The translations under genes were made by a program, and so were the position numbers. The notes beneath the pieces are model-generated. The model saw only the letters and a program-made list of their open reading frames with translations, was not told the DNA's origin and made no database searches. DNA of 64,000 nt from Lama glama (Eukaryota): contig CM052825.1 in the NCBI GenBank assembly GCA_028534125.1, positions 24,862,001 through 24,926,000 of the forward strand, given 5' to 3'. Shown here piece after piece: positions 46,868 through 46,944 of this stretch. How positions within the stretch are numbered: position 1 is the stretch's first letter; every line of letters begins with the position of its first letter.

Positions 46868-46944
<77 letters not shown>

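What the first reader, a model, noticed from the sequence alone, without database searches (positions are those of the whole stretch)
46869..46940. Pure (CAG)24 polyglutamine tract in the ribosome-collision sensor ZNF598
Seen: 24 uninterrupted in-frame CAG codons in exon 7 (…RASVAA-Q24-ETRRSEDQ…). Recalled: human ZNF598 has only about 3 Gln here (AAQQQEEARR) and is about 904 aa, so the extra 21 Gln would account for the 925 aa here. No CAA interruptions suggests a recent, slippage-prone and probably polymorphic expansion. Inference: the E3 ligase that detects collided ribosomes now carries a CAG hairpin-forming tract in its own mRNA, just downstream of the RING/C2H2 module. This could act as a length-tunable autoregulatory element or a candidate repeat-expansion locus in this lineage.
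Basis: partly seen in the sequence, partly recalled or inferred. Interest (0 to 1): 0.8.

Follow-up and report, generated by a model that had tools for sequence, protein, structure and literature searches.

The report
Pure CAG24 polyglutamine run in ZNF598
A camelid copy of the ribosome-collision sensor gene ZNF598 carries 24 uninterrupted CAG (glutamine) codons at a site where other mammals have 2 to 11; it looks like an ordinary, if extreme, slippage expansion of a variable coding microsatellite, with no sign so far of a special function.

Summary
Window 46869-46940 is a perfect (CAG)24, in frame in the seventh coding exon (46817-47064, +) of a ZNF598 orthologue identified by Pfam RING_ZNF598, PAH_ZNF598 and zf_C2H2_ZNF598 hits.

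Among 231 amniote ZNF598 proteins:
- Birds, reptiles and a marsupial have Q1.
- Primates (including Pan and Pongo), rodents, Afrotheria and Xenarthra have mostly Q2-Q3.
- Laurasiatheria vary from Q2 to Q11. Cetaceans reach 14-15 residues with His interruptions, and pig shows both Q8 and Q10.

So this is a hypervariable site, and Q24 is more than twice the longest pure run seen elsewhere.

The tract directly follows a nearly invariant acidic/Ala-rich helix (EEEDREVAAAIRASVA). AlphaFold predicts the helix to run on through the glutamines.

The autoregulation idea has no support. The exon's RNA fold is unremarkable (z = -1.27), and 24 CAG is far below the lengths for which ribosome collisions are reported.

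The only camelid protein found (Camelus ferus) has a gene model that skips the tract.

Verdict: new member of a known kind (lineage-specific coding polyQ microsatellite). Interest is modest.

The parts
46869..46940 (+). Perfect (CAG)24 encoding Q24
46817..47064 (+). ZNF598 coding exon 7 (AG acceptor 46815-16, GT donor 47065-66; codons start at 46818)
46818..46868 (+). Codes EEEDREVAAAIRASVAA, a nearly invariant acidic/Ala-rich helix (UIM-like by pattern only) that abuts the Q tract
   Evidence: 231 sequences, most positions above 95% identical; predicted helix; Pfam UIM not hit
46941..47064 (+). Rest of exon 7, ETRRSEDQVEGSRPRKEEAVVRGPEEPRGPRRPARTQGEGP, a charged disordered linker
   Evidence: pLDDT 57-66, no secondary structure after residue 51
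38379..38603 (+). ZNF598 exon 1 (start codon region, first half of RING_ZNF598); boundaries approximate, from tblastn
43672..43788 (+). Exon 2 (second half of RING_ZNF598)
44509..45596 (+). Exons 3-5 (44509-44655, 45059-45274, 45375-45596), the C2H2 zinc-finger module
46144..46254 (+).
47265..48222 (+). Exons 8 (47265-47347) and 9 (47458 to about 48220), a disordered Pro-rich region ending in the PPPPG motif
48730..49579 (+). C-terminal exons (PAH_ZNF598 and zf_C2H2_ZNF598; stop codon at 49577-49579)

Best explanation
The tract is a lineage-specific replication-slippage expansion of a coding CAG microsatellite that already existed at this exact site in ZNF598. The ancestral amniote state is one Gln (AAKRQEE). 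Most placental orders have QQ-QQQ. Laurasiatherian lineages have repeatedly lengthened the run to 4-11 Gln, and in the camelid lineage of this window it has reached 24 pure CAG units. It is translated as Q24 in the linker between the N-terminal RING/C2H2 module and the Pro-rich region, directly after an invariant helix, which it probably just lengthens. The most likely effect on the protein is small (neutral or nearly neutral). Because the tract is long and uninterrupted, it is expected to vary in length within the population. Shown here: sequence, frame, gene identity, cross-species length distribution and the predicted helix. Inferred: the slippage mechanism, recency, neutrality and polymorphism.
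For: - Sequence: perfect 24-unit repeat, in frame, with canonical splice sites. Gene identity from Pfam and best matches to named ZNF598 orthologues.
- Length distribution at the homologous site in 231 sequences: birds, reptiles and marsupial Q1; primates, rodents, Afrotheria and Xenarthra mostly Q2-Q3; bats Q2-Q5 (Miniopterus Q9PQQ); Equus Q6-7; ruminants Q4-8; pig Q8 and Q10; mustelids and bears Q7-9; Talpa and Hyaena Q10; cetaceans Q8-10; Hippopotamus Q11; Pseudorca Q9HQ4; Globicephala Q6HQQHQ5.
- Differences between sister species and within pig show that the site mutates by unit gain and loss. The longest relatives carry His or Pro interruptions, while the window's tract has none.
- The flanks are conserved, so only the repeat number changes.
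- AlphaFold puts the motif, Q24 and about 10 further residues in one helix (pLDDT 85-96 over residues 1-40). The same element is the only confident structure between the zinc fingers and the PAH domain in a full-length hippo model (helix 334-372).
- RNA runs hold 0.29-0.36 of the sampled words of a stretch that is about 48% exon, as expected if the exons are expressed (inference).
- Coding polyQ length variation of this type is documented in camels for AR (PMC5802489) and across mammals for FOXP2 (PMC10582585).
Against:
- No DNA of relatives could be fetched, so the CAG/CAA composition of shorter tracts is unknown.
- No second camelid sequence covers the tract. The Camelus ferus model omits it.
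- Neutrality is assumed, not tested. The tract abuts one of the most conserved short motifs of the protein, so an effect on that motif cannot be excluded.
Confidence: 0.75

Rival explanations
1. Assembly artefact of length. A CAG run exists here, but the number 24 is wrong (over- or under-called by the assembler or polishing), or it represents one haplotype of a heterozygous animal.
For: Perfect repeats are error-prone in assemblies. The only other camelid gene model (Camelus ferus, P0158) jumps from exon 6 to just after the tract, as happens when the repeat region is gapped or unreadable. No reads could be laid.
Against: 72 bp is short enough to be spanned by ordinary 100-150 bp reads and by any long read. 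The flanks are clean and the frame intact. Another long pure coding CAG tract is noted elsewhere in this genome (s1-863726, unchecked). Relatives show that the site truly expands.
Confidence: 0.12
2. Functional tuning of the protein. By lengthening the invariant UIM-like helix with a helical or coiled-coil-prone polyQ segment, the tract changes ZNF598 self-association, condensation or ubiquitin/ribosome contacts in this lineage.
For: The tract abuts a motif conserved in 231 amniote sequences. A continuous helix is predicted. PolyQ length changes alter coiled-coil formation, phase separation and activity in FOXP2 (PMC10582585).
Against: The site tolerates Q1 to Q15 across amniotes with no pattern tied to biology. 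AlphaFold habitually draws polyQ as a helix. The Pfam UIM model does not match, and no ubiquitin-binding role of this motif was found in the literature.
Confidence: 0.08
3. mRNA-level autoregulation. The CAG run forms a hairpin or slows ribosomes so that ZNF598 senses collisions on its own message, with the output set by repeat length.
For: The minimum-free-energy fold pairs the tract with itself. Expanded CAG in mutant HTT is reported to cause collisions (PMC11880988, citing Eshraghi 2021 and Aviner 2024).
Against: The fold energy is not distinguishable from shuffles (z -1.27; 19 of 200 shuffles fold as well) and the centroid leaves the tract open. CAG is a common, well-decoded Gln codon (own knowledge). 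24 units is in the normal range of human polyQ genes (own knowledge). One study saw no or marginal stalling even with expanded HTT exon 1 (PMC7394408).
Confidence: 0.04

Closest known systems
Species-variable coding polyQ microsatellites (FOXP2 Q1/Q2 across mammals, PMC10582585; androgen receptor Q16-19 alleles in dromedary, PMC5802489; RUNX2 and CLOCK from own knowledge)
   Same: An in-frame CAG run in a disordered or helical linker of a conserved regulator. Its length differs between and within species through unit gain and loss, and the flanks are conserved.
   Different: No ZNF598 polyQ variation was found in the searched literature. No phenotype or activity correlate is known. The pure run here is longer than at the same site in any other species sampled.
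Human polyglutamine disease loci (HTT, ATXN1/2/3/7, AR, ATN1, TBP, CACNA1A; own knowledge)
   Same: A pure or nearly pure CAG tract encoding polyQ. Purity predicts instability. In ataxin-3 the tract lies next to UIM helices.
   Different: 24 units is below the usual pathogenic thresholds (about 35-40 or more, except CACNA1A). No instability, aggregation or disease is known. ZNF598 is not a known repeat-expansion gene.
Ribosome-stalling mRNA elements sensed by ZNF598 (poly(A)/AAA runs; expanded repeats)
   Same: A homopolymeric codon run inside an ORF.
   Different: CAG/Gln runs of this length are not an established stall signal. The predicted structure is not unusually stable.
Ubiquitin-interacting motif (UIM)
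   Same: The preceding helix fits the recalled pattern acidic-acidic-acidic-x-x-x-hydrophobic-x-x-A-x-x-x-S in 226 of 231 sequences and is predicted helical.
   Different: The Pfam scan gave no UIM hit. The acidic residue after the Ser is missing. No report of a UIM in ZNF598 was found.

Membership tests
ZNF598/Hel2 E3 ligase orthologue | ZNF598-type RING domain | tested here: met
   PF25447 RING_ZNF598: E 1.2e-24 (exon 1 ORF) and 1.2e-12 (exon 2 ORF), both above the cut-off
ZNF598/Hel2 E3 ligase orthologue | C-terminal PAH domain and ZNF598-type C2H2 finger | tested here: met
   PF23202: E 2e-13 and 1.6e-06. PF23208: E 1.9e-18
ZNF598/Hel2 E3 ligase orthologue | Collinear exon-by-exon match to named mammalian ZNF598 proteins | tested here: met
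   tblastn of Hippopotamus, Globicephala and Sus proteins maps about 12 exons in order over 38379-49576, at 81-98% identity per exon. The closest protein is Camelus ferus ZNF598.
ZNF598/Hel2 E3 ligase orthologue | Intact spliced reading frame of full length | not tested
Exons were searched one by one by reference.
Coding trinucleotide (polyQ) microsatellite | Perfect period-3 tandem array in frame within an exon | tested here: met
Coding trinucleotide (polyQ) microsatellite | Length varies at the orthologous site among species while the flanks stay conserved | tested here: met
   Q1 to Q11 pure, up to 15 interrupted, in 231 sequences
Coding trinucleotide (polyQ) microsatellite | Length polymorphism within the species of the window | not testable with these tools
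Within-species variation was seen only in relatives (pig Q8 and Q10).
Pathogenic polyQ repeat-expansion locus | Allele length above a disease threshold, with germline or somatic instability | tested here: not met
   24 units is below the usual 35-40 threshold (own knowledge). Instability is not testable.
Ubiquitin-interacting motif (for the flanking helix) | Match to the curated UIM profile | tested here: not met
   No UIM family was listed at E up to 10 for exon 7 (best 25 of 51 families shown), for the 21-residue motif, or for two full-length orthologues. The profile is very short, so the test is weak.
Ubiquitin-interacting motif (for the flanking helix) | Binds ubiquitin | not testable with these tools
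   Needs a binding assay
Ribosome-collision-inducing mRNA element | Unusually stable structure or a known stall-prone codon run | tested here: not met
   Fold z-score -1.27, centroid unpaired. CAG runs of 24 are not an established stall signal (PMC7394408; PMC11880988 concerns expanded HTT).

The most novel reading that the evidence does not exclude
The Q24 run is not neutral. As a rigid helical extension of the invariant UIM-like helix, or as an unstable pure CAG tract with much longer alleles segregating in the population, it makes camelids natural carriers of an altered (or length-polymorphic) ribosome-collision sensor. That would give a natural allelic series for ZNF598 dosage or activity and a candidate veterinary repeat-expansion locus.
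Probability: 0.07. Interest if true: 0.6.

Novelty: new member of a known kind. Interest (0 to 1): 0.3.

Why it matters
If the length is real, this lineage carries by far the longest glutamine run known at this site of ZNF598, the ligase that marks collided ribosomes. That offers a natural variant for asking whether the linker helix after the zinc-finger module matters for function, and a marker that is probably highly polymorphic. The comparison also gives two modest pieces of annotation for the family. It shows that the ZNF598 Q-run is a hypervariable site across Laurasiatheria. It also draws attention to the almost invariant helix just before it, which has no assigned function. In itself the tract is an ordinary kind of coding microsatellite, and nothing found here points to a new mechanism.

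Tried and rejected
- **Read-level check.** All runs were k=31 contigs anyway and could not have sized a 72-bp perfect repeat.
- **Other camelid proteins.** Three word searches returned only one camelid protein, Camelus ferus P0158, whose model skips the tract. The Logan-derived fragments were not camelid.
- **Metagenome scan.** A camelid-specific 23-mer from the right flank gave two chance hits in bacterial contigs.
- **UIM membership.** The Pfam and PDB sequence searches of the flanking helix gave nothing usable.
- **PDB search of the C2H2 exon.** No hit.
- **Representative search.** The big-exon query returned mostly single-exon ORF fragments. It was useful only for P0003.
- **Full-length hippo AlphaFold model.** Poor overall (mean pLDDT 40.6); only local helices are interpretable.
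- **Antisense ORF.** The 438-aa ORF on the minus strand (46857-48173), with its poly-Leu from CTG, was dismissed as a GC-rich reading-frame artefact inside a well-supported plus-strand gene.

Full report
**Observation.** Window 46869-46940 reads as 24 uninterrupted CAG units. Tandem Repeats Finder reports period 3, 24.0 copies, 100% matches, no indels and score 144. It is the strongest tandem array in the 64 kb window. A (CAG)8 pattern is found only inside it, with 0 expected from 100 dinucleotide-preserving shuffles. The tract lies in an exon bounded by an AG acceptor at 46815-46816 and a GT donor at 47065-47066. Read from 46818, the exon gives EEEDREVAAAIRASVAA-Q24-ETRRSEDQVEGSRPRKEEAVVRGPEEPRGPRRPARTQGEGP.

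**Gene.** I searched the exon-containing ORFs one at a time by reference.
- Pfam gave RING_ZNF598 (E 1.2e-24 and 1.2e-12), PAH_ZNF598 (2e-13) and zf_C2H2_ZNF598 (1.9e-18).
- tblastn of named orthologues (Hippopotamus, Globicephala, Sus) against the window maps collinear exons from about 38379 to 49576 on the + strand, with the polyQ exon seventh.
- A MARVEL-domain ORF on the minus strand at 53344-53889 fits a synaptogyrin neighbour, as recalled for the human locus.
- It is arithmetically plausible: hippo is 907 aa with Q11.

**Which animal.**
- The closest protein in the collections is Camelus ferus ZNF598 (P0158). Its individual exons are 94-100% identical to the window, while no other representative exceeds about 83% overall.
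- Parts of that model that read through introns differ from the window at roughly 4% of nucleotides.
- Five coded organism labels hold 96-99% of the window's 31-mers.

My inference is a camelid, probably not Camelus itself.

**Comparison across species.** The representative search with the large exon gave a partial Balaenoptera protein with Q9 at the site. Word searches seeded with that protein, with hippo and with Camelus ferus, plus one cluster look-up, gave 276 proteins. Of these, 231 carry the flanking motif.

| Group | Run after ...IRASVA[A/T] |
|---|---|
| Birds, turtles, lizards, Monodelphis | AAKRQEE / AARRQEE (Q1) |
| Primates (incl. Pan paniscus, Pongo), rodents, Afrotheria, Xenarthra | Mostly Q2-Q3; primates read AAQQQEEARR |
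| Bats | Q2-Q5 (Miniopterus Q9PQQ) |
| Equus | Q6-7 |
| Diceros | Q5 |
| Canids | Q5PQQ |
| Seals | QQPQQ |
| Mustelids and bears | Q7-9 |
| Hyaena, Talpa | Q10 |
| Catagonus | Q4 |
| Pig | Q8 and Q10 in different records |
| Ruminants | Q4-8 |
| Cetaceans | Q8-10 |
| Pseudorca | Q9HQ4 |
| Globicephala | Q6HQQHQ5 |
| Hippopotamus | Q11 |

The longest pure run outside the window is 11, and the longest Q-rich stretch is 15. The site is therefore a hypervariable coding microsatellite in Laurasiatheria, with several independent lengthenings, and the window's Q24 is the extreme. The longest relatives are interrupted, whereas the window's tract is pure. That fits a recent or still active slippage process (inference).

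**Protein context.** The 17 residues before the tract (R-E-E-E-D-R-[E/D]-V-A-A-A-[I/V]-R-A-S-V-A) are nearly invariant in all 231 sequences, although the surrounding linker is poorly conserved.
- AlphaFold on the exon peptide predicts a single helix over residues 2-51, covering the motif, Q24 and about ten more residues, with pLDDT 85-96 over the first 40.
- In a full-length hippo model the equivalent helix (334-372) is the only confident element between the zinc fingers and the PAH domain. That model is otherwise poor, with mean pLDDT 40.6.
- The motif fits the recalled UIM pattern. However, Pfam shows no UIM hit, a PDB sequence search found nothing and no paper describes a UIM in ZNF598. It stays a lead only.

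**The autoregulation idea.**
- The exon's minimum-free-energy RNA fold does pair the CAG run with itself. But the energy is within the shuffle distribution (z -1.27; 19 of 200 shuffles fold as well), and the centroid leaves the tract open.
- Literature links CAG-driven collisions to expanded mutant HTT (PMC11880988, citing Eshraghi 2021 and Aviner 2024).
- Another study found no or marginal stalling even for expanded exon 1 (PMC7394408).
- No paper reports a polyQ or CAG tract within ZNF598 itself.

Nothing here supports a regulatory role, though it is not excluded.

**What could not be done.**
Local scripts that ran fetched proteins against the whole window file had the place in the subject only.
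- The runs on offer were k=31 contigs, which cannot size a 72-bp perfect repeat in any case.
- The Camelus ferus gene model jumps from ...EDYEELDR to SEDQVEG..., omitting the tract. That is what a gapped or unreadable repeat would produce, but it proves nothing about length.
- A metagenome scan with a right-flank 23-mer hit only two bacterial contigs by chance.

**Verdict.** The best explanation is a lineage-specific slippage expansion of a pre-existing, hypervariable CAG/polyQ microsatellite. It is translated as an extension of a conserved linker helix and is probably near-neutral and polymorphic (confidence 0.75). The rivals are:
- error in the assembled length (0.12);
- protein-level tuning through the helix (0.08);
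- mRNA-level autoregulation (0.04).

It is a new member of a known kind. The same scan noted a pure (CAG)22 in PRRC2B elsewhere in this genome (s1-863726, unchecked), so long pure coding CAG runs may not be rare in this genome.

Noticed in passing
window 46818-46868 (+): The 17 residues before the Q tract (EEEDREVAAAIRASVAA) are nearly invariant in 231 amniote ZNF598 sequences and are predicted helical. They fit the recalled UIM pattern, but the Pfam UIM model does not hit and no paper assigns the motif a function.
   Followed up: partly
P0158 (Camelus ferus ZNF598, 733 aa) versus window 46209-46950: The only camelid protein found has a gene model that splices from ...EDYEELDR directly to SEDQVEGTRPRK..., skipping the rest of exon 6 and the Q tract. 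It also reads through several introns. It is probably a draft-assembly model built around a gap or unreadable repeat.
   Followed up: partly
Long pure coding CAG runs may be a more general feature of this lineage or assembly.
   Followed up: no
P0037/P0258-P0262 (Sus scrofa); P0025, P0186 (Globicephala, Pseudorca): Pig records differ at the site (Q8 versus Q10), which shows within-species polymorphism. Two delphinids carry His-interrupted tracts of 14-15 residues, where other cetaceans have pure Q8-10.
   Followed up: partly
window 53344-53889 (-): An ORF with a MARVEL-domain hit (E 6e-06) lies downstream of ZNF598 on the opposite strand. It is probably a synaptogyrin exon, consistent with the recalled human neighbourhood.
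   Followed up: partly
window 38319-38458 (+): GC-rich short repeats, (GCCGC) x7.8 and a 22-bp unit x3.4, overlap the ZNF598 5' end and the Ala-rich start of exon 1. This looks like a CpG-island-type low-complexity region.
   Followed up: no
window 25023-25083, 25691-25734, 26104-26174: An (AC)23 microsatellite and perfect (GCGGCGGG) x5.5 and (CGGCTC) x12 arrays lie in a GC-rich region upstream. The long ORFs there gave no Pfam hit.
   Followed up: no
window 46857-48173 (-): A 438-aa antisense ORF runs through exons 7-9 and ends in poly-Leu from the CTG strand of the tract. I took it as a GC-rich frame artefact.
   Followed up: no
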